Source: Trichosphaerium sp. ATCC 40318 | Taxonomy: Eukaryota > Protista > Tubulinea | Reading direction: 5' to 3' | Assembly: GCA_038496445.1 (NCBI GenBank) | Contig: JALMLS010000516.1 | Coordinates: forward strand, 124,001 to 188,000 | DNA length: 64,000 nt | Shown: positions 8,359 through 55,159 of the stretch, one piece after another | How positions within the stretch are numbered: position 1 is the first letter of the stretch | Layout of the letters: each line of letters begins with the position of its first letter | Translations under genes and position numbers: made by a program | The notes under the pieces: model-generated | What the model was told of the DNA's origin: nothing | Database searches by the model: none | The model's input: only the letters and a program-made list of their open reading frames with translations

Positions 8359-9463
8359 ATGAACGCACGTGAACAACGAACGAAAGAAAGAGGATCATAT
8401 TGCCAAACACTCGAACTAACAGCGCTGCCAGTTGAGGTTATTGTTCATATTCTTAAACAAGGCAGGTATACACTCCGCGCAGCCCAAACGTGCCATATTT
8501 TGCGAGATATAGTTCACAACCACGTTGGTTACGATGATATTATGGTAAGGAACGAAACCGAACTCGCTAGACTTTCAGGAAGCCCTCTGCTTCAAAATAC
8601 TAGAATATCGTTATTTCATGGTAAGAAATCCTTCAACGTCCCTGTTGGTGACAGTCACATGTATTTGCTTTCGGGAGTCCATACCATTGATGTACGGGGT
8701 TCTCAAGCGTTAACAGACAAGGGTATTAAGGCATTATCAGGCGTGAAAAATATTAATCTAACATCGTAAAACAATTACAGATGACGGCATCAAAACATTA
8801 TCGGGTGTGCACGTGATATATTTAGATGGCACAAATGTTACGGACGATGGATTAAAGTCACTAAAAGGCGTACATACTATAGGCTTGTCTCATTGTGATG
8901 GTATAACAGATGAAGGCGTCAAAGTACTCAAAGGCGTGAAAAATATTGATTTATCTGTGACAAGAGTTTCTGATGAATGCTTAAATGAATTGAAAGGCGT
9001 ACATTGTATACACTTAGCTTATTGCGAAAATATAACAGATAAAGGAATCAAGGCATTGAGCGGTGTACATGAAATTAATCTAGCGTATACAGCAGTTGGT
9101 GATGAAGGAATTGAGGCGTTAGTTGGTGTACACACAATTAATCTGCAAGCAGTAAAAGTGACAGGGATAGGATTAAAGGCATTAAAAGGCGTGTATAAAA
9201 TCAACTTAGCTCACACAAATATCACAGATGATTGTTTGAAGTACCTAGCTAGTGCGCGCACAGTCAACATCTCCAGTTGTTCGCAAGTTACAGACTTGGG
9301 TATTGCACAACTTGTTGGAGTGTGTAGCCTTAATATTAATTCATGTCCAAATGTAAAAGGTGAGAGCTTGTGTACACTCATAGGTTTAAAGGAATTGAAG
9401 CCTAGCAGCACTGTAAACGAAGATATCATTAATGATTTGAAAAACAGAGGTGTAAAAGTATAG
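8359..9463 (+). pseudogene. Intronless F-box/LRR gene split by a frameshift at about 8767-8770
   Basis: F-box-like LPVEVIVHIL...AAQTCHILRDIV, then LxGVHxIxLxxCxxITDxG repeats. ORF1 stops at TAA 8767-8769 and the repeat register resumes in the +1 frame at 8771. Confidence 0.8.
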
Positions 9464-24687: not shown

Positions 24688-24918
24688 TGCCGGTAAGACA
24701 GACATCTGTCCCTCCACTACTAGACCGTTAGGTACATGTAGGGAACGATCATCAAACGTCCATTCCCAGGTGAAGGCGTGAGCCAAACCTCAGAAGGATC
24801 TGCTTCCCGCTCAGAACAGAGGTCTCGGGTCGTCATCCAGGCAATGCTGTTATGGCATATTGCAACAGATAATAGTGACGAATACTCCTACAGAAATGAA
24901 CCTGCGAAGTAAGGTCAT
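24688..24918 (-). ncRNA. U3: U3 snoRNA (variant copy)
   Basis: The minus strand reads AUGACCUUACUU (GAC/A'), GGUUCAUUUCUGUAG (box A), AUGACGA (C'), GAGCGGGAAGC (B) and UUGAUGAUCG (C), with terminal stem UGCCUGG/CCGGCA and then a T-run. About 231 nt, boxes in the correct order. Confidence 0.9.
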
Positions 24919-39215: not shown

Positions 39216-40510
39216 CTACTTCTTTGGTTTTGTACTTGTTCGCGTGTATGTGACTGTTACGCGGAACGCAAACTGTGTAATATTATGGTACTCGTCAAGC
39301 TTAGGAATACAGAGCTGAGAATATTGGACTCCTTTAATCAATTCTCCTGCTGTTGTAACCCAAGAAGTGGCTTCTTTCATTACACCATGTAGTAGCGCGT
39401 CAACATCAACACCAGGTGGAGAAGCAAATATTTCAAACTAAAGCAAGGAGGTTTAGAGAAAAATCGTGTTTTAGTCGAACTGAGCTGTTCAACGAAATAA
39501 ATAAAAACGTAAAGCATGTTTACGCGTGCACTCGCACGTACCCCTTGTGTACCAGCCGCCATAGATCCAATTGTATCTCGATGAGACGTTGCGCCAGCGT
39601 CTACCTCTGTAATTTCAATCTCGCACTCTATCGTTAGAGGTATATCATCCAAGTTATCACCAATAAGTACTTGACCTTTACTTAATTTGATAGGACTCAA
39701 TACTGAAGTGAGTTTGCTTCAGAAAAAAAAAAAAGTCAGTTTGAGAAGATAAAAATAATCAAAAGTGTCATTAGACGCGTTCAAAAAATACGATAGAATA
39801 ATACTATTAGGAATTAAGAGAAAAAGAGCTTGTAGAAAAAATACAGACAGATTTTCTTGTTTTAAAGTTTTAAAACGTCACTTACAATCTCTTGTTGATG
39901 CCTATGGGCGCAAGGGGTTGTGATACTCCTCTGGTTACTTTTTGTTTACTCTCAAGCATCTAGCATCCCAACGTTACAAAAGTCATAATAGAACAGTTAA
40001 CACGTACAAACATGATGCATACGCTTGCTGTGCGTAAGTTGCCTGCCGCTTTGATTACAATGGGCGACTTGAATTGCGGATTAAAGCCCGCAACATACGC
40101 AGAGCTCTTTTGGTTCTTTTGGTCGACTTTACCATCTTGTATAGACCAACGAAGTTTGGATTTGGTCTTTGATTTAGAGCCGATCTATAGCGACGTGAGA
40201 ACGAACTCAAGGCACTTGTACTTACCAACGGGTTATCAGCTGACACGCCAATAATGCGAATGTCAGAGATTGTAACGTTATACTCCGAGAAGTTATGCTA
40301 TAGCAGTTTAGCGTCGTTGTGGTGTTTCTTTCAAAGTAACGCGTATGACAAAATAACACGTACCTGAGAAGACTCCAAGTTCACGAAAGGATTATCTCCA
40401 GAGTCTGGTACAGCAACACCGGTTGAGAACGGGTTATCACCAGCAATTTGAGGTTCTCCTCCTTCTAAGCCGTTAAGATCGGCGTTAGCGTTTCTAAAAG
40501 GGTTGTCCAT
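39216..40510 (-). CDS. Hypothetical protein with three N-terminal DNPF motifs
   Basis: MDNPF...GDNPF...GDNPF. Spliced through ORFs 40055-40246 and 39380-39700, ending TKPKK-TAG. NPF is the established EH-domain ligand. Confidence 0.65.
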
Positions 40511-40824
40511 CTCTCCTAGTATGCTACCGCGTGTAAGTGTATTTTCAAAGCTGCGGGGAATAAATGGCTTTTGATGCAGGTTTGACTGAGTGTCAGCAAT
40601 GGTCTTGCTGTTCGAATCACAAAGCGCAAGAGTACATATTTTTGGGTTTTGTTGTCGCTAATACAAAAATACGCTAGCGTACCCTGTTTTCTCCGCCATA
40701 TTGTATTATTACGCACTATGCAACTATTGTGTCTCGTTTGCAAAGAAATATAAAAATTCTTGAATTTCTGTTGAAATGATACACAAGAACAGTTGAGACA
40801 CAGGTTCGGTGTAGTGCGGCTCTA

Positions 40825-41933
40825 ATGGCCCAATCTCAAGTCGTTGGTAAGTAGAGTAGAGAGCCAATACAACAACTACTCTACAATTTGTAATATTAAA
40901 TTTTATTGCTTTTAGAGGTTAATGTTGGCGGTACTATATTCACAACGTTACTGTCAACGCTGACAAAGTTCCCTAACTCCTTATTGGGCGCTATGTTTTC
41001 TGGAAGGCACAATTTGTGCCGCGATGCAAACCAAAGGTACCTGGCACTATATTACACTATTTGTAAACTTACTCTCAATTATCAGAGTTTTTATTGACCG
41101 CTCTGCATCGCATTTCGCTAAGATACTCAATTTCCTACGAACAGGACTGTTTATATGGCCAGAGAATAACGAGTCGGAAAGTTTCGAGCTCAAGATGGAA
41201 TTAGACTACTTTGGCCTTTCGCCGTACGGTGCGCCTTCTGACGGTGCCACTGAACCAATCTAATTAATTTCACAGTTTGCCTGCCAAGTAAAGGAAACAT
41301 TCTGGTTGTAGAGGATGAAAAAGTAAACGCCAGCGCTGTAAAACACTTGCTGGAGAAAATGGTACACAACTAAACAAAAAGAATACCAACCAAAAGTTGT
41401 TGACACTTTTTTGAGGGTTATTCTGTTCTGGTTTGTGAAAATGGTGCTGAAGCTATTGCTTCGTATCAATCTGAACAGGTTGATCTCATCTTCATGGATT
41501 GTTTGGTACGTTATAAATTATTACCACGTGAAAAGTACATTCATTTACAATCGCTTTGTATTTACGTTTTACGGTTTTTATTTTTATTTGTGACAAATAC
41601 CACGTTTTTAATACACCGTTGTGATACAATTTTATCTGTCAATAAAAAGAGTTAAATATTGGCTCACTGTGTATGCGCTTATACGACTTGTAGATGCCTG
41701 TAATGGATGGTATTGAGGCTACAAAAACAATACGAAAAATTGAAGCACAAAAAGGATTGCCTAGAGTGCCAATCATAAGCTTGACAGTATTAGGGTATCC
41801 CAAAGTAGAACAGGAATGTCTTGCTGCTGGTACAGACGCTCATCTTATAAAACCATTACGTAATGGCGAGATTGAAGTTGTTTTGAACAAATTTATGAAA
41901 ATACCCCAACAAAAACAGCACCACGGCAACTAA
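40825..41933 (+). CDS. KCTD-type BTB (T1) domain fused to a response-regulator receiver domain
   Basis: VNVGGTIFTTLLSTLTKFPNSLLGAMFSGRH...FIDRSASHFAKILNFLRTG...ELDYFGL, spliced in frame to ILVVEDEKVN...NGAEA...DLIFMDCL|MPVMDGIEAT...PIISLT...LIKP. Confidence 0.85.
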
Positions 41934-42080
41934 CTCAAACAAAAAATTGTACTAATAAACACTATCTATTAAATACCAGACAGTACATATACACATACAA
42001 AGTAGCAATCCCCATCCAAGCACGAAAGGTAATGAGGAATTAGTATGACATCAAGACTTCCTTTGGTCAATCGAGTTGTA

Positions 42081-42748
42081 TCACGTGGAGTCTTTGTTTA
42101 CATAGTCAAAGCAATCTAAAAAGTGTCAAAGTTGCTAAAAAAGACTGGTACCTGTGCTCCATTCATTTCTAATCATTTCTAAGCCGTTGTCAATGTCACG
42201 CGTTGTTAGACCTTTGTTTGGATTGACTCGTATTGCGTATGCTCCATTTTGTCTAACGTCCTGCACATGACGTAAAGTATCGTCAAAGAATATGATATTA
42301 CACGCCTCAGTATCTACAAAAAATGCGATAAGCTTACCTATTCAGTATCAATGAACTTACCCCAACGTCTACAAATGTCTTGGACCATTTTCCATTTGCT
42401 GTGGAATTTAATGAAATTACTGCTTGTTAATGAGCTTGCAGTTTTAGGAGATAGAACAACATCGAACAGTGGTGCGAAATTCAAGGTTGATAAGACCTAC
42501 AGTACATTAGGTAAGTATCAATTAAAAACCGTTACTTCTTTTGCTTGAAAGTTGTGAGACGCTATTGCGAGCTTGTATTTCTTTGTTTTTAAGCTATTCA
42601 GAATTTCTTCGCATTGTGGGTATGTACAAACTTGATCTTGGTTTAAATCGCGTAGTACACCATCTAGATCGAAAATAAAGTACACTGATCGCTTTTTCTT
42701 CTTGACCCGACGTCTTTTTTTTGGCCTCTTGGCTTCAGGCGATGACAT
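42081..42748 (-). CDS. HAD-superfamily phosphatase, MDP-1-like
   Basis: FIFDLDG (motif I), LAIASHN (II), KWKM (III), IFFDD (IV). Basic NLS-like N-terminus. Confidence 0.8.
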
Positions 42749-42850
42749 GTGCGCTATGAGTTGTCATGCTTGTAACGCTCAAAATATTACGAATGCGCTA
42801 TGGTCAACGTCAATTTAAACAAACGTTAAAACGTCTGAGGTTTGAACACA
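42749..42850. promoter_or_regulatory. Compact (102 bp) divergent intergenic region, probable bidirectional promoter
   Basis: Lies between ATGs at 42748 (-) and 42851 (+). Confidence 0.5.
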
Positions 42851-52995: not shown

Positions 52996-54297
52996 TCATT
53001 TTGCACATATAGCCTGCACAGCAGCTTTTGTACACTTTGTACCATCTATAATAATTATAGAAGCACCTTGAAGAGCTGATATCCCTTCATCTGTTACAAG
53101 AGAACAATTCCTTAGACTTATTGTATGAACGCCTGCTAGAGCTTTAATACCTTTATCTGTTATCTTGGCACATCGATTCAACCGTATATTGTGTACACCA
53201 GCAAGATGAATAACACCTTCATCTGTGATATCAGTACAATCAGCCAAGTGAATAGTATGCACCCCTGCAAGTGATTTCAATCCATTATCAGTTACACCTT
53301 TACAGCCGCCCAAGTATATTATGTGAACCCCTGATAAAAGGTCTAGCCATGAGTCGTCTATTACTAACCCTTCCAAGTCGATGGTGTGAATACCAGAAAA
53401 GGTTGATATTGATGCAATAGTTAGGTTTCTGCACCTGGCCAAGATGAGTTTGCTTACGCCAGCAAGAGGTATGATATGTTCATCTTTAACCATCAACTTA
53501 CGTAAGTTAATTTCTTGTACACCTGACAATTGTTTCACTTTATCTAGAATTACGCGAGAACAGTTACCAATATCAATCACGTGAAGACACATTTCACCTT
53601 TTCTATTTTTAGCTTTAGCCAAGTACTCAAAACAAGATCCATCAATATCTCTACAATCCGACATTTTTATTGTGTGAGCTCCAGCGAGTGCTTTTACACC
53701 ATTGTCAGTGACTTTGCAAGAACTGATATTTATATAATGAACTCCAGCAAGATATTTTAATCCTTCATCAGTTATCTGGACACATGACGCAATATTTACG
53801 CTATAAGCACCTGAAATAGCTTTCAATGACTTATCTGTCAAGTGCCGTATATAACTCACATCTATCGTATGTACACCTGACAAGAATTGTATACCTTCAT
53901 TAGTGATATATGGGCACTCATATATATCTATTTCTTTAATACCAGCGTGTGCCTCAAGGCACTTATCAGTCACCTTCAAGTACCACATGGATAATTTCTT
54001 AACACCAGCCAAAGAACATATTTCCTTGTCTGAGGCCTTGAACTTCCGGATTGATACATATGTATTGTTTAAAAGCGATTTCTGATCGCTTAAACGCTTT
54101 ATGGACTCTGATGATGTAACAACGATTTTACCGTAACCAACATGTCTGTGAATAATGTCGTAGAATAGCCAGCACGTCTGAGCAATAGAATATCGTGTTT
54201 TATTCGGAGTATGCTCAAAAACGGTAGCAATGAGTTCTGTAGGTATTGTTTCGACGAACCGAGGATTTATACCATCACGTTGTACAGCACTAGCCAT
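52996..54297 (-). CDS. Intronless F-box/LRR protein, paralog of 8359-9463
   Basis: Probable start MASAVQ at 54297; IPTELIATVF...IAQTCWLFYDIIHRHVGY; LAGVHTIxLxxCxxITDEG repeats. Confidence 0.88.
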   Translation of the reverse strand: MASAVQRDGINPRFVETIPTELIATVFEHTPNKTRYSIAQTCWLFYDIIHRHVGYGKIVVTSSESIKRLSDQKSLLNNTYVSIRKFKASDKEICSLAGVKKLSMWYLKVTDKCLEAHAGIKEIDIYECPYITNEGIQFLSGVHTIDVSYIRHLTDKSLKAISGAYSVNIASCVQITDEGLKYLAGVHYINISSCKVTDNGVKALAGAHTIKMSDCRDIDGSCFEYLAKAKNRKGEMCLHVIDIGNCSRVILDKVKQLSGVQEINLRKLMVKDEHIIPLAGVSKLILARCRNLTIASISTFSGIHTIDLEGLVIDDSWLDLLSGVHIIYLGGCKGVTDNGLKSLAGVHTIHLADCTDITDEGVIHLAGVHNIRLNRCAKITDKGIKALAGVHTISLRNCSLVTDEGISALQGASIIIIDGTKCTKAAVQAICAK

Positions 54298-55159
54298 AGG
54301 TACGCAACAATTGGAATAAAGCTTGCTTAGCAACCCGGTTAAGCAAAGACAGCTGAACCCAGGAAGTACGATATCAGTGAGCGCAACAGCTGGTAAAAAA
54401 ATTTTGAAAACTTCAAAAATTCCAACCTCCATTAGTCTCAAAAGTCCATAAAACCGGGTGTACAGCCATTAAATACGCTTTCGGACAGCCTTTTCGCTTT
54501 GCTCAGTATCTGACTTTCACGCATATAAATGTCTCTATCTTGTTTCTTTCTAGGTATGAACACTTTACAAGGGACATAGCTGAAGAGTTCTTTTCAATTG
54601 TCTGTCTCATTCAAGTTTTGAGACAGTCAAAACAAGCCAATGTCTGCCTGACTCAAACAAGCATACTACAGGTACAGTTCAATTTGATTCAAAACTATAT
54701 TTTAACGTAGAGCTCTAATGGATTTGACAGAACTTTAAATCTCAAATTTTCAAATTGATCTGCGTCACAGCATCCAGTCAAGCGGAAATTTTCGCAAATC
54801 CAACGTTTAACCCACGTGATTTAAAACCCAAAGCTTCTATTTGATACCTTGTAGCGTTTGCAAAGCCCCGTACATGACATTGGTTTGAATAGCTGGCTAA
54901 TGTTTATTCGCGCTGTAGACTGTACGTTGAGAGCGCCAATGCAAGCGTAAGTATCGCTAGTACCACCGATGTTAAATTGTCTGTTAGGTTTAAAAATACA
55001 GCAAACAGCTCTCGACTCTATTCATACCGTGCTTCTTACAACGAACGTTATTACATAGCTTTTCTCTAGGTAATTGAGGACATCCTTTGCACGAAAGACT
55101 ATTGTTAGAAAGCATGTTAAGGCAGCATGTTGTGAATCCATCAATTCTTTATTAATATA

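What the first reader, a model, noticed from the sequence alone, without database searches (positions are those of the whole stretch)
40825..41933. BTB(KCTD/T1)-receiver fusion: a possible His-Asp phosphorelay-controlled Cullin-3 adaptor or oligomeric scaffold
Seen: three separate ORF-track fragments splice into one frame. The GTGCGC donor at about 41229 joins the CAG acceptor at about 41274 to give DYFGLSPYVCLPSKGNILVVEDE. The receiver keeps the ED pair, the phospho-Asp (GAT 41497-41499, MDCLMP), the beta4 Thr and the KP lysine. There is no kinase or DNA-binding output domain. Established: KCTD BTB domains oligomerise and many bind Cul3, and receivers are switched by HPt/His-kinase phosphorylation. 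Inference: two-component signalling wired directly to ubiquitylation or oligomer state. I do not know this architecture as characterised, but I cannot search for it.
Basis: partly seen in the sequence, partly recalled or inferred. Interest (0 to 1): 0.78.

Follow-up and report, generated by a model that had tools for sequence, protein, structure and literature searches.

The report
BTB domain fused to phosphorelay receiver
An amoeba-like protist expresses one small gene that joins a KCTD-type BTB domain (the kind that self-assembles and often recruits the Cullin-3 ubiquitin ligase) to an intact two-component receiver domain; I found this layout described in no paper, and it could link histidine-aspartate signalling to protein assembly or degradation, though that is untested.

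Summary
Window 40825-41933 (+) holds one six-exon gene of 702 coding bases (233 aa). Pfam finds BTB_2 on exons 2-3 and Response_reg on exons 5-6. One 786-base contig spans the whole mRNA.

The receiver keeps the acidic pair, the phospho-Asp, the Thr and the Lys-Pro.

The fusion is a small conserved family. It has two full-length transcriptome ORFs from other protists (P0019 and P0151; P0019 is 46-69% identical to our exons). It also has environmental contigs, one of them an uninterrupted BTB_2+receiver ORF. No named or annotated protein and no paper with this architecture turned up.

The genome encodes hybrid histidine kinases, an HPt protein and a Cul3 orthologue. The only other non-kinase receiver I could detect is a RegA-type phosphodiesterase.

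The BTB is closest to the Cul3-binding KCTD7, KCTD10 and KCTD13. One of the four known Cul3-contact positions is Leu, as in non-binders. Cul3 binding and oligomerisation therefore remain inference, and the single complex prediction gave no verdict.

Verdict: a real new variant of a response regulator, mechanism unproven.

The parts
40781..40824 (+). 5' UTR (approximate transcript start 40781-40785)
   Evidence: Contigs of X5 and X2 begin at 40781 and 40785; X2's is preceded by adapter letters. No ATG lies before 40825, and an in-frame TGA lies at 40777-40779.
40825..40846 (+). Exon 1: start codon plus 7 codons and 1 base (MAQSQVV, then a split Glu codon)
   Evidence: Sequence. The joint 40846|40916 is in X5 and X2 contigs, and exon 1 appears as a loose end in X1.
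40916..41036 (+). Exon 2: first half of the BTB_2 domain. It holds Leu 40981-40983 (equivalent of KCTD7 M76) and Arg-His 41005-41010 (equivalent of R84/H85).
   Evidence: Pfam BTB_2 profile 3-32, E 2.6e-6. Alignment to KCTD7 chain 8i79. Cul3-contact residues are defined in PMC10348674.
41086..41228 (+). Exon 3: second half of the BTB_2 domain (FIDR...ILNFLRTG...ELDYFGL). Tyr 41207-41209 is the equivalent of KCTD7 Y131.
   Evidence: Pfam BTB_2 profile 44-87, E 7.5e-10. Alignments to KCTD10 and KCTD13, and via P0019 to KCTD7.
41229..41275 (+). Intron 3 (47 nt, GTGCGC...CAG), the intron that joins BTB to receiver
   Evidence: The joint 41228|41276 is in the contigs of X1 and X5. Unspliced, the frame stops at 41261-41263.
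41276..41361 (+). Exon 4: linker of about 9 residues (V-CLPSKG) and receiver beta1/alpha1, with the acidic pair Glu 41311-41313 and Asp 41314-41316
   Evidence: Translation. It is colinear with residues 93-122 of P0019, where Pfam places Response_reg positions 1-22.
41416..41505 (+). Exon 5: receiver beta2-beta3, with the phospho-acceptor Asp 41497-41499 (motif FMDCL)
   Evidence: Pfam Response_reg profile 22-50. The joints on both sides are in X1, X5 and X3.
41694..41933 (+). Exon 6: receiver alpha3-alpha5, with Thr 41784-41786, Lys-Pro 41850-41855, a short tail and the TAA stop
   Evidence: Pfam Response_reg profile 52-107, 32.1 bits. The nearest solved chains are receivers of hybrid histidine kinases.
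41934..41973 (+). 3' UTR, with AATAAA near 41955
   Evidence: The X1 and X5 contigs both end at 41973; sequence.

Best explanation
This is one expressed gene for a 233-residue response regulator whose output domain is a KCTD/T1-type BTB domain.

Shown: the gene model, the single mRNA, both domains, an intact receiver active site, and conservation of the fusion in at least four other protist sequences.

Inferred mechanism:
1. The protein is a terminal acceptor of the organism's relay from hybrid histidine kinases through the HPt protein.
2. The BTB domain assembles the protein into a ring-like tetramer or pentamer, as KCTD BTB domains do.
3. The receivers, tethered by a linker of only about 9 residues, then sit where KCTD proteins carry their substrate-binding C-terminal domain.
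4. Phosphorylation of the Asp encoded at 41497-41499 remodels the receiver's alpha4-beta5-alpha5 face and so changes how the ring packs and what it binds.
5. The most likely partner is the genome's Cul3 orthologue. That would make Cullin-3 ligase assembly or target choice depend on His-Asp signalling.
For: - Gene and mRNA.
- Receiver residues all present and invariant in the relatives.
- Orthologues with BTB_2 plus Response_reg: P0019 (71.6 and 82.9 bits), P0151 (75.1 and 80.7 bits) and the uninterrupted ORF L088:3-809 (48.4 and 85.9 bits).
- The environmental locus L004 has an intron at the same place as our intron 2.
- Relay parts in the same genome: hybrid kinases and an HPt gene with the HSIKGAS motif.
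- Apart from this gene, only a RegA-type receiver-phosphodiesterase lacks a kinase.
- The receiver resembles HPt-facing receivers of Sln1, CKI1 and fungal hybrid kinases.
- The BTB is nearest to the Cul3 binders KCTD7, KCTD10, KCTD13 and SHKBP1.
- R84, H85 and Y131 equivalents are kept (with PMC10348674).
- A Cul3 orthologue with ...LSFEELYR / NAYNMVLHKYG... is present.
- In KCTD proteins the BTB mediates multimerisation and Cul3 binding while the C-terminal domain gives specificity (PMC5664961).
- An AlphaFold model of P0019 is confident: pLDDT 93.6, pTM 0.73.
Against: - No binding, phosphorylation or oligomerisation was measured.
- The equivalent of KCTD7 M76 is Leu here, Ile or Val in three relatives, and Met only in P0019. 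PMC10348674 lists Leu or Thr at this site for KCTDs that do not bind Cul3.
- P0151 has also lost the R84/H85 pair (it reads G-Q).
- The four-copy BTB prediction gave no verdict.
- A receiver is not a known substrate-binding module of any Cullin-3 adaptor.
- The window's own full-length protein was never searched or folded, because its exons may not be joined here. Structural statements rest on the orthologue P0019.
Confidence: 0.45

Rival explanations
1. Cullin-independent oligomeric response regulator. The BTB domain serves only to multimerise the receivers, as in KCTD1, KCTD12, KCTD15 and KCTD16, which do not bind Cul3. The protein would then act as a multivalent phosphate sink or buffer for the HPt protein, or as a phospho-dependent scaffold for some other partner. 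Ubiquitylation would not be involved.
For: - Leu sits at the KCTD7 M76-equivalent position, and Ile or Val in three relatives. This is the class PMC10348674 associates with non-binders.
- The R84/H85 pair is not conserved in P0151.
- Single-domain receivers that act as phosphate sinks are well established in bacterial chemotaxis and in phosphorelays (own knowledge).
- There is no additional substrate-binding domain.
Against: - Overall sequence and fold similarity is highest to Cul3-binding KCTDs.
- R-H and Tyr are kept in the window's protein.
- P0019 has the binder-type Met.
- A sink needs no conserved BTB, yet the BTB is as well conserved as the receiver: 61-69% against 46-63% identity to P0019.
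Confidence: 0.3
2. Feedback adaptor. The receiver is itself the substrate-recognition module. It docks its natural partner, the HPt protein (or a hybrid kinase), and the BTB-Cul3 ligase ubiquitylates that partner, which tunes the relay.
For: - The receiver occupies the position of the KCTD substrate-binding C-terminal domain (for that principle).
- It resembles receivers solved in complex with HPt proteins, such as Sln1-Ypd1 (2r25) and 8pdc.
- The genome has one detectable HPt.
Against: - Receiver-HPt contacts are transient and weak (own knowledge).
- No precedent was found in papers.
- It depends on Cul3 binding, which is itself unproven.
Confidence: 0.1
3. Annotation artefact: two separate genes or an untranslated read-through, so that BTB and receiver are never in one polypeptide.
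For: Unspliced, the BTB frame ends at a TAA at 41261-41263, 33 nt into intron 3. The receiver alone would have no upstream ATG of its own until 41359.
Against: - Full-length spliced contigs in two runs and partial ones in two more, from four studies, join all exons in frame.
- Orthologous complete ORFs carry both domains.
- The exons tile these ORFs without gaps.
Confidence: 0.03

Closest known systems
Human KCTD7, KCTD10 and KCTD13 (BACURD) - Cullin-3 adaptors with a T1-type BTB domain
   Same: N-terminal BTB_2 domain without the dimerisation extension or the 3-box. For the orthologue P0019 the best solved matches are KCTD7 (8i79, 65 bits) and KCTD10 (5fta, 44% identity, TM 0.81-0.84). The equivalents of KCTD7 R84, H85 and Y131 are kept in the window's protein.
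   Different: The KCTD C-terminal domain, which binds substrates, is replaced by a receiver domain. The M76 equivalent is Leu. Oligomeric state and Cul3 binding are untested.
RegA of Dictyostelium and other Amoebozoa (receiver + cAMP phosphodiesterase)
   Same: It is a eukaryotic, non-transcriptional response regulator fed by hybrid kinases through one HPt protein. A RegA-type gene is present in the same genome. RegA-type genes are reported for Dictyostelium and Physarum in PMC4758236.
   Different: In RegA the receiver is N-terminal and controls an enzyme. Here the receiver is C-terminal and is attached to a protein-interaction and oligomerisation domain with no catalytic activity.
Bacterial response regulators that act as proteolysis adaptors (RssB/SprE of E. 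coli, CpdR of Caulobacter)
   Same: Concept only (own knowledge): phosphorylation of a receiver decides whether a protease or degradation machine is engaged.
   Different: They are not homologous outside the receiver. They serve ClpXP, not a cullin-RING ligase, and they have no BTB domain.
RhoBTB proteins (GTPase switch domain fused to BTB, Cullin-3 adaptors)
   Same: A signalling switch domain is fused in one chain to a BTB domain. Other agents report G-alpha-BTB fusions in this same genome (unchecked).
   Different: The switch is a small GTPase, not a phospho-Asp receiver. The BTB domains are of the dimeric PF00651 type, not the T1/KCTD type.
Single-domain and type-A response regulators of eukaryotes (e.g. 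plant type-A ARRs, yeast Ssk1 receiver)
   Same: A receiver with complete active-site residues that takes phosphate from an HPt protein. The nearest solved receivers are HPt partners.
   Different: None of them carries a BTB domain.

Membership tests
Response regulator receiver domain (CheY-like, PF00072) | Sequence or profile match over the whole (beta-alpha)5 domain | tested here: met
   Exon 5 covers profile 22-50 and exon 6 covers 52-107 at 32.1 bits, above the 30.2 cut-off. Exon 4 aligns to positions 1-22 through P0019. The orthologue model has five strand-helix pairs and matches solved receivers at TM 0.8-0.9.
Response regulator receiver domain (CheY-like, PF00072) | Acidic pair after beta1, phospho-acceptor Asp after beta3, Thr/Ser after beta4, Lys(-Pro) after beta5 | tested here: met
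   VVEDE (41311-41316), FMDCL (41497-41499), SLT (41784-41786) and IKP (41850-41855). All are conserved in P0019, P0151, L088 and P0270.
Response regulator receiver domain (CheY-like, PF00072) | Actual phosphorylation by an HPt or a histidine kinase | not testable with these tools
   Only the presence of donors could be shown: an HPt gene and hybrid kinases.
KCTD / T1-type BTB domain (PF02214 BTB_2) | Profile match to BTB_2 rather than to the dimeric BTB (PF00651), with no N-terminal extension and no 3-box | tested here: met
   BTB_2 on exons 2 and 3. The domain starts 8 residues after the start codon and is followed by a linker of about 9 residues. No PF00651 hit was reported.
KCTD / T1-type BTB domain (PF02214 BTB_2) | Homo-oligomerisation (tetramer or pentamer) | tested here: inconclusive
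   A prediction with four copies of P0019 residues 1-96 scored 0.60, but one control scored 0.41, so there was no verdict.
KCTD family protein (BTB plus KCTD-type C-terminal domain) | C-terminal domain of the KCTD type (the three-strand plus helix unit that oligomerises and binds substrates) | tested here: not met
   The whole region after the BTB is a receiver domain.
Cullin-3 substrate adaptor | Cul3-contact residues as defined on KCTD7: M76 (Met or Phe in binders), R84, H85 and Y131 | tested here: inconclusive
   The window's protein has Leu, Arg, His and Tyr at these four positions. P0019 has Met, Arg, Phe and Tyr. P0151 has Ile, Gly and Gln at the first three. L088 has Val, Arg and Val. 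L004 has Val, Lys and Val. Sources; definition in PMC10348674.
Cullin-3 substrate adaptor | A Cul3 orthologue with the BTB-binding H2 helix in the same organism | tested here: met
   At G000:C86 (L089), one exon ends ...NASGLSFEELYR and the next begins NAYNMVLHKYGDKLY.
Cullin-3 substrate adaptor | Physical binding to Cul3 and delivery of a substrate | not testable with these tools
   The Cul3 N-terminal domain is split by introns, so no unjoined reference could be given to the complex predictor.

The most novel reading that the evidence does not exclude
The protein is a phosphorelay-gated Cullin-3 adaptor. Aspartate phosphorylation of the receiver ring switches assembly of a BTB-Cul3 ligase, or its choice of targets. 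That would be the first direct coupling of His-Asp two-component signalling to cullin-RING ubiquitylation. With RegA, it would be one of only two output branches of this amoeba's relay.
Probability: 0.3. Interest if true: 0.82.

Novelty: new variant of a known kind. Interest (0 to 1): 0.62.

Why it matters
Eukaryotic two-component relays have very few known outputs: transcription factors in plants, MAP-kinase control in fungi, and the RegA phosphodiesterase in amoebae.

Here a conserved, expressed gene puts an intact receiver on a KCTD-type BTB domain. In animals that module builds Cullin-3 ligases or regulatory oligomers. In this genome it is one of only two receivers I could find that are not part of a kinase.

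If phosphorylation controls the BTB assembly or Cul3 binding, it would give a new output logic for His-Asp signalling. It would also give a small, natural, phospho-switchable KCTD-like protein in which to study how events at the C-terminal position of the ring act on BTB oligomers.

If it does not bind Cul3, it is still a new kind of multivalent response regulator.

Tried and rejected
1. Complex prediction with four copies of the BTB domain of P0019 gave no verdict: score 0.60 against a control at 0.41. It is not used as evidence either way.

2. The scan of metagenome contigs with the family alignment chose receiver motifs as patterns. It returned only receiver-only matches, none covering the BTB part of the query, so it added no members.

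3. The ESM Atlas look-up of P0019 returned only bacterial receiver clusters.

4. I suspected the nearest BTB paralogue (C100/C406, L002) carries a SPRY domain. Pfam found nothing there, so the idea was dropped.

5. P0308/L086 looked like another member but is BTB_2 plus TLDc, so it was excluded.

6. The junction between BTB and receiver in the environmental locus L004 could not be resolved into a clean intron. It counts only as adjacent ORFs on the same strand.

7. A regular-expression search for the Cul3 H2 motif failed at first, because an intron splits the motif. Reading the exons by eye found it.

8. Species identity was not established. Earlier agents call the genome an amoeba-like protist. 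The RegA-type gene fits Amoebozoa but does not prove it.

9. No search, fold or look-up was made with the window's own full-length protein.

Full report
**1. The observation**

I read 40500-42300 and listed the ORFs. The + strand carries six coding pieces that fit together with GT..AG introns:

| Piece | Coordinates | Note |
|---|---|---|
| Exon 1 | 40825-40846 | |
| Intron 1 | 40847-40915 | 69 nt, GTAAGT..AG |
| Exon 2 | 40916-41036 | |
| Intron 2 | 41037-41085 | 49 nt |
| Exon 3 | 41086-41228 | |
| Intron 3 | 41229-41275 | 47 nt, GTGCGC..CAG |
| Exon 4 | 41276-41361 | |
| Intron 4 | 41362-41415 | 54 nt |
| Exon 5 | 41416-41505 | |
| Intron 5 | 41506-41693 | 188 nt |
| Exon 6 | 41694-41933 | ends in TAA |

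The exon lengths sum to 702 nt, or 233 codons plus the stop.

Pfam was scanned exon by exon:
- BTB_2 (PF02214) on exon 2: profile 3-32, E 2.6e-6.
- BTB_2 on exon 3: profile 44-87, E 7.5e-10.
- Response_reg (PF00072) on exon 5: profile 22-50, E 3.5e-4.
- Response_reg on exon 6: profile 52-107, 32.1 bits.

**2. RNA evidence**

Nine public runs were listed, seven of which held part of the stretch. I laid four runs from four studies on 40600-42100. All five joints appear exactly at the predicted bases.
- Run X5 has one 786-nt contig covering 40781-41973 with every intron removed.
- Run X1 has a 740-nt contig with four joints, and exon 1 as its loose end.
- Runs X2 and X3 have partial contigs with two joints each.

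The joint that fuses BTB to receiver (41228|41276, the GTGCGC donor) is in X1 and X5. The alternative GTAC donor was not seen.

Each exon has only one 100% match in the 70.3-Mb genome. The intron-less form therefore comes from RNA, not from a second DNA copy.

The contigs begin at 40781-40785 and end at 41973. ATG 40825 is the first AUG in that transcript.

So there is one mRNA and one open frame, with BTB and receiver in a single polypeptide.

**3. The receiver is intact**

The acidic pair (Glu-Asp, 41311-41316), the phospho-acceptor Asp (41497-41499), the Thr (41784-41786) and the Lys-Pro (41850-41855) are all present.

The nearest solved chains for exon 6 are receivers of hybrid histidine kinases (PA1611, GacS, CKI1, Sln1), which exchange phosphate with HPt proteins.

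**4. Relatives**

An exhaustive HMMER search of 1.84 billion representatives with exon 6 was dominated by multi-receiver kinases. It held one short protein at 64% identity, P0019 (221 aa). Pfam finds BTB_2 at residues 6-91 (71.6 bits) and Response_reg at 101-215 (82.9 bits) in it.

I then ran three word-index searches of 5.8 billion proteins.
- They found one further full-length protein with both domains, P0151 (227 aa, 65% identical to P0019). Both are ORFs marked complete from EukProt transcriptome assemblies.
- They found environmental JGI fragments.
- On contig L088 the frame 3-809 is one uninterrupted ORF with BTB_2 (48.4 bits) and Response_reg (85.9 bits).
- On L004/L005 a BTB_2 ORF (46.2 bits) is followed about 70 nt downstream, on the same strand, by a receiver ORF. 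Its BTB is interrupted by an intron at the same position as our intron 2.

The window's exons tile P0019 colinearly at 69, 61, 46, 50 and 63% identity. The linker is short and conserved, reading P-S/A-K-G and then the first strand of the receiver.

After these members, the next hits carry only one of the two domains (BTB_2 with TLDc, or a receiver alone). None of the dual-domain proteins has a name from NCBI or UniRef.

Full-text searches found no paper describing a BTB-receiver fusion. The Physarum survey of amoebozoan response regulators lists only bare receivers, leucine-rich-repeat forms and RegA-type forms (PMC4758236).

Caveat: the word-index searches reach only relatives of this family within set length windows. 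Independent fusions elsewhere cannot be excluded.

**5. The signalling context in the same genome**

Six-frame family scans of the window's own assembly gave:
- at least 86 BTB_2 exon matches;
- only 12 receiver matches;
- this locus as the only place where the two families meet.

All other receiver matches lie beside HisKA and/or HATPase_c, so they belong to hybrid kinases: C11, C13, C17, C19, C159, C214, C245 and the C83/C250/C338 copies. The one exception is at C140, where the receiver is followed by PDEase_I exons. That is a RegA-type gene.

An HPt gene lies at C5. It scores below the Pfam cut-off (22.9 bits), but it reads ...YVHSIKGASMYMGASR, the canonical phospho-His motif.

The BTB-receiver protein is therefore one of only two kinase-free receivers I could detect. 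These scans work exon by exon, so the counts are lower bounds.

The closest receiver paralogue is that of the hybrid kinase at C17 (46% identity). The closest BTB paralogue is at C100/C406 (53%).

**6. Can the BTB bind Cullin-3?**

For the orthologue's BTB, the best solved matches are, in order:
- KCTD7 in its Cul3 complex (8i79, 65 bits), KCTD10 and KCTD13;
- a Kelch protein (4yy8);
- SHKBP1;
- only then KCTD1, KCTD16 and KCTD15, which do not bind Cul3.

Foldseek on a confident AlphaFold model of P0019 (pLDDT 93.6, pTM 0.73) gives KCTD10 as the best BTB match, at 44% identity and TM 0.81-0.84. No solved chain spans both domains.

The KCTD7-Cul3 paper (PMC10348674) defines the primary interface:
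- M76, which is Met or Phe in binders and Lys, Arg, Thr or Leu in non-binders;
- R84 and H85;
- Y131.

Tool alignments map these positions as follows:

| Sequence | M76 position | R84/H85 positions | Y131 position |
|---|---|---|---|
| Window's protein | Leu | Arg-His | Tyr |
| P0019 | Met | Arg-Phe | Tyr |
| P0151 | Ile | Gly-Gln | not read |
| L088 | Val | Arg-Val | not read |
| L004 | Val | Lys-Val | not read |

The window's protein keeps three of the four positions, but the most discriminating one is ambiguous.

A Cul3 orthologue exists at C86. One exon ends ...NASGLSFEELYR and the next starts NAYNMVLHKYGDKLY. That is the Cul3 H2 helix with its aromatic triad, split by an intron.

The one complex job, four copies of the BTB domain, gave no verdict.

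**7. Mechanism**

In KCTD proteins the BTB domain mediates multimerisation and Cul3 binding, and the C-terminal domain gives substrate specificity (PMC5664961). Here the receiver sits exactly where that C-terminal domain would be, on a very short linker.

The best-supported model is a terminal response regulator whose phosphorylation changes the packing or the partner binding of a BTB oligomer. Cul3 is the most likely partner.

Which steps are shown and which are inferred:
- Shown: the gene, the mRNA, the domains, the active-site residues, the conservation, and the presence of kinases, an HPt and Cul3.
- Inferred: phosphorylation, oligomerisation, Cul3 binding, and any effect of one on another.

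Rivals are:
- a Cullin-independent oligomeric sink or scaffold;
- a feedback adaptor that uses the receiver to present the HPt to Cul3;
- a gene-model artefact, which the RNA evidence has essentially excluded.

**8. Limits**

The window's own full-length protein was neither searched nor folded, and the structural statements rest on the orthologue P0019.

Earlier agents call it an amoeba-like protist, and the RegA-type gene agrees with Amoebozoa.

**9. Verdict**

It is a new variant of a known kind. It can be seen as a response regulator with a BTB_2 output, or equally as a KCTD-like protein whose C-terminal domain is a receiver.

It is conserved in a small protist family and is undescribed in what I could search.

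Noticed in passing
G000:C140, about 67.7-70.6 kb, minus strand (L094:247-3033): A RegA-type gene: receiver exons followed by PDEase_I exons (53.5 and 38.9 bits). Besides the BTB-receiver gene it is the only receiver in this genome not attached to a kinase.
   Followed up: partly
G000:C5, about 619.5-620.1 kb, minus strand (L001:1150-1800): A candidate HPt gene split by introns. The Pfam score of 22.9 bits is below the cut-off, but the exon reads ...IYVHSIKGASMYMGASR, the canonical phospho-His motif.
   Followed up: partly
G000:C86 (L089:2603-3081, minus strand): A Cul3 orthologue whose BTB-binding H2 helix (LSFEELYR / NAYNMVLHKYG) is split by an intron. Four other cullin loci lie at C31, C66, C47 and C37.
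   Followed up: partly
window 41949-42750, minus strand: A convergent neighbour gene with a HAD-hydrolase-like DLDGVL motif (ORF 42518-42748). Its transcript contigs reach 41949-41952, so they overlap the 3' UTR of the BTB-receiver mRNA (which ends at 41973) by about 20 nt.
   Followed up: no
window 41543-41573 (inside intron 5): A 31-nt stretch occurs inside an unrelated 388-nt contig of run X5 at higher depth. It is probably a short dispersed repeat.
   Followed up: no
window 24689-24918, minus strand: A U3 snoRNA gene (Rfam RF00012, 75 bits, full length).
   Followed up: no
G000:C100:215720-215848 and C406:20412-20540 (L002): The nearest BTB_2 paralogue (53% identity to exon 3). It is present as two identical-scoring copies, like many other loci in the scans, which suggests haplotigs in the assembly. 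Its C-terminal ORFs have no Pfam hit.
   Followed up: partly
L086 and proteins P0152-P0268: A large environmental family of BTB_2 plus TLDc proteins is the closest BTB relative outside the fusion family (about 50-55% identity over the BTB).
   Followed up: no
window 8807-9463 (+) and 52996-54441 (-): Long ORFs made of leucine-rich repeats of the GVH.I.L..C..ITD type. The second has an F-box-like start.
   Followed up: no
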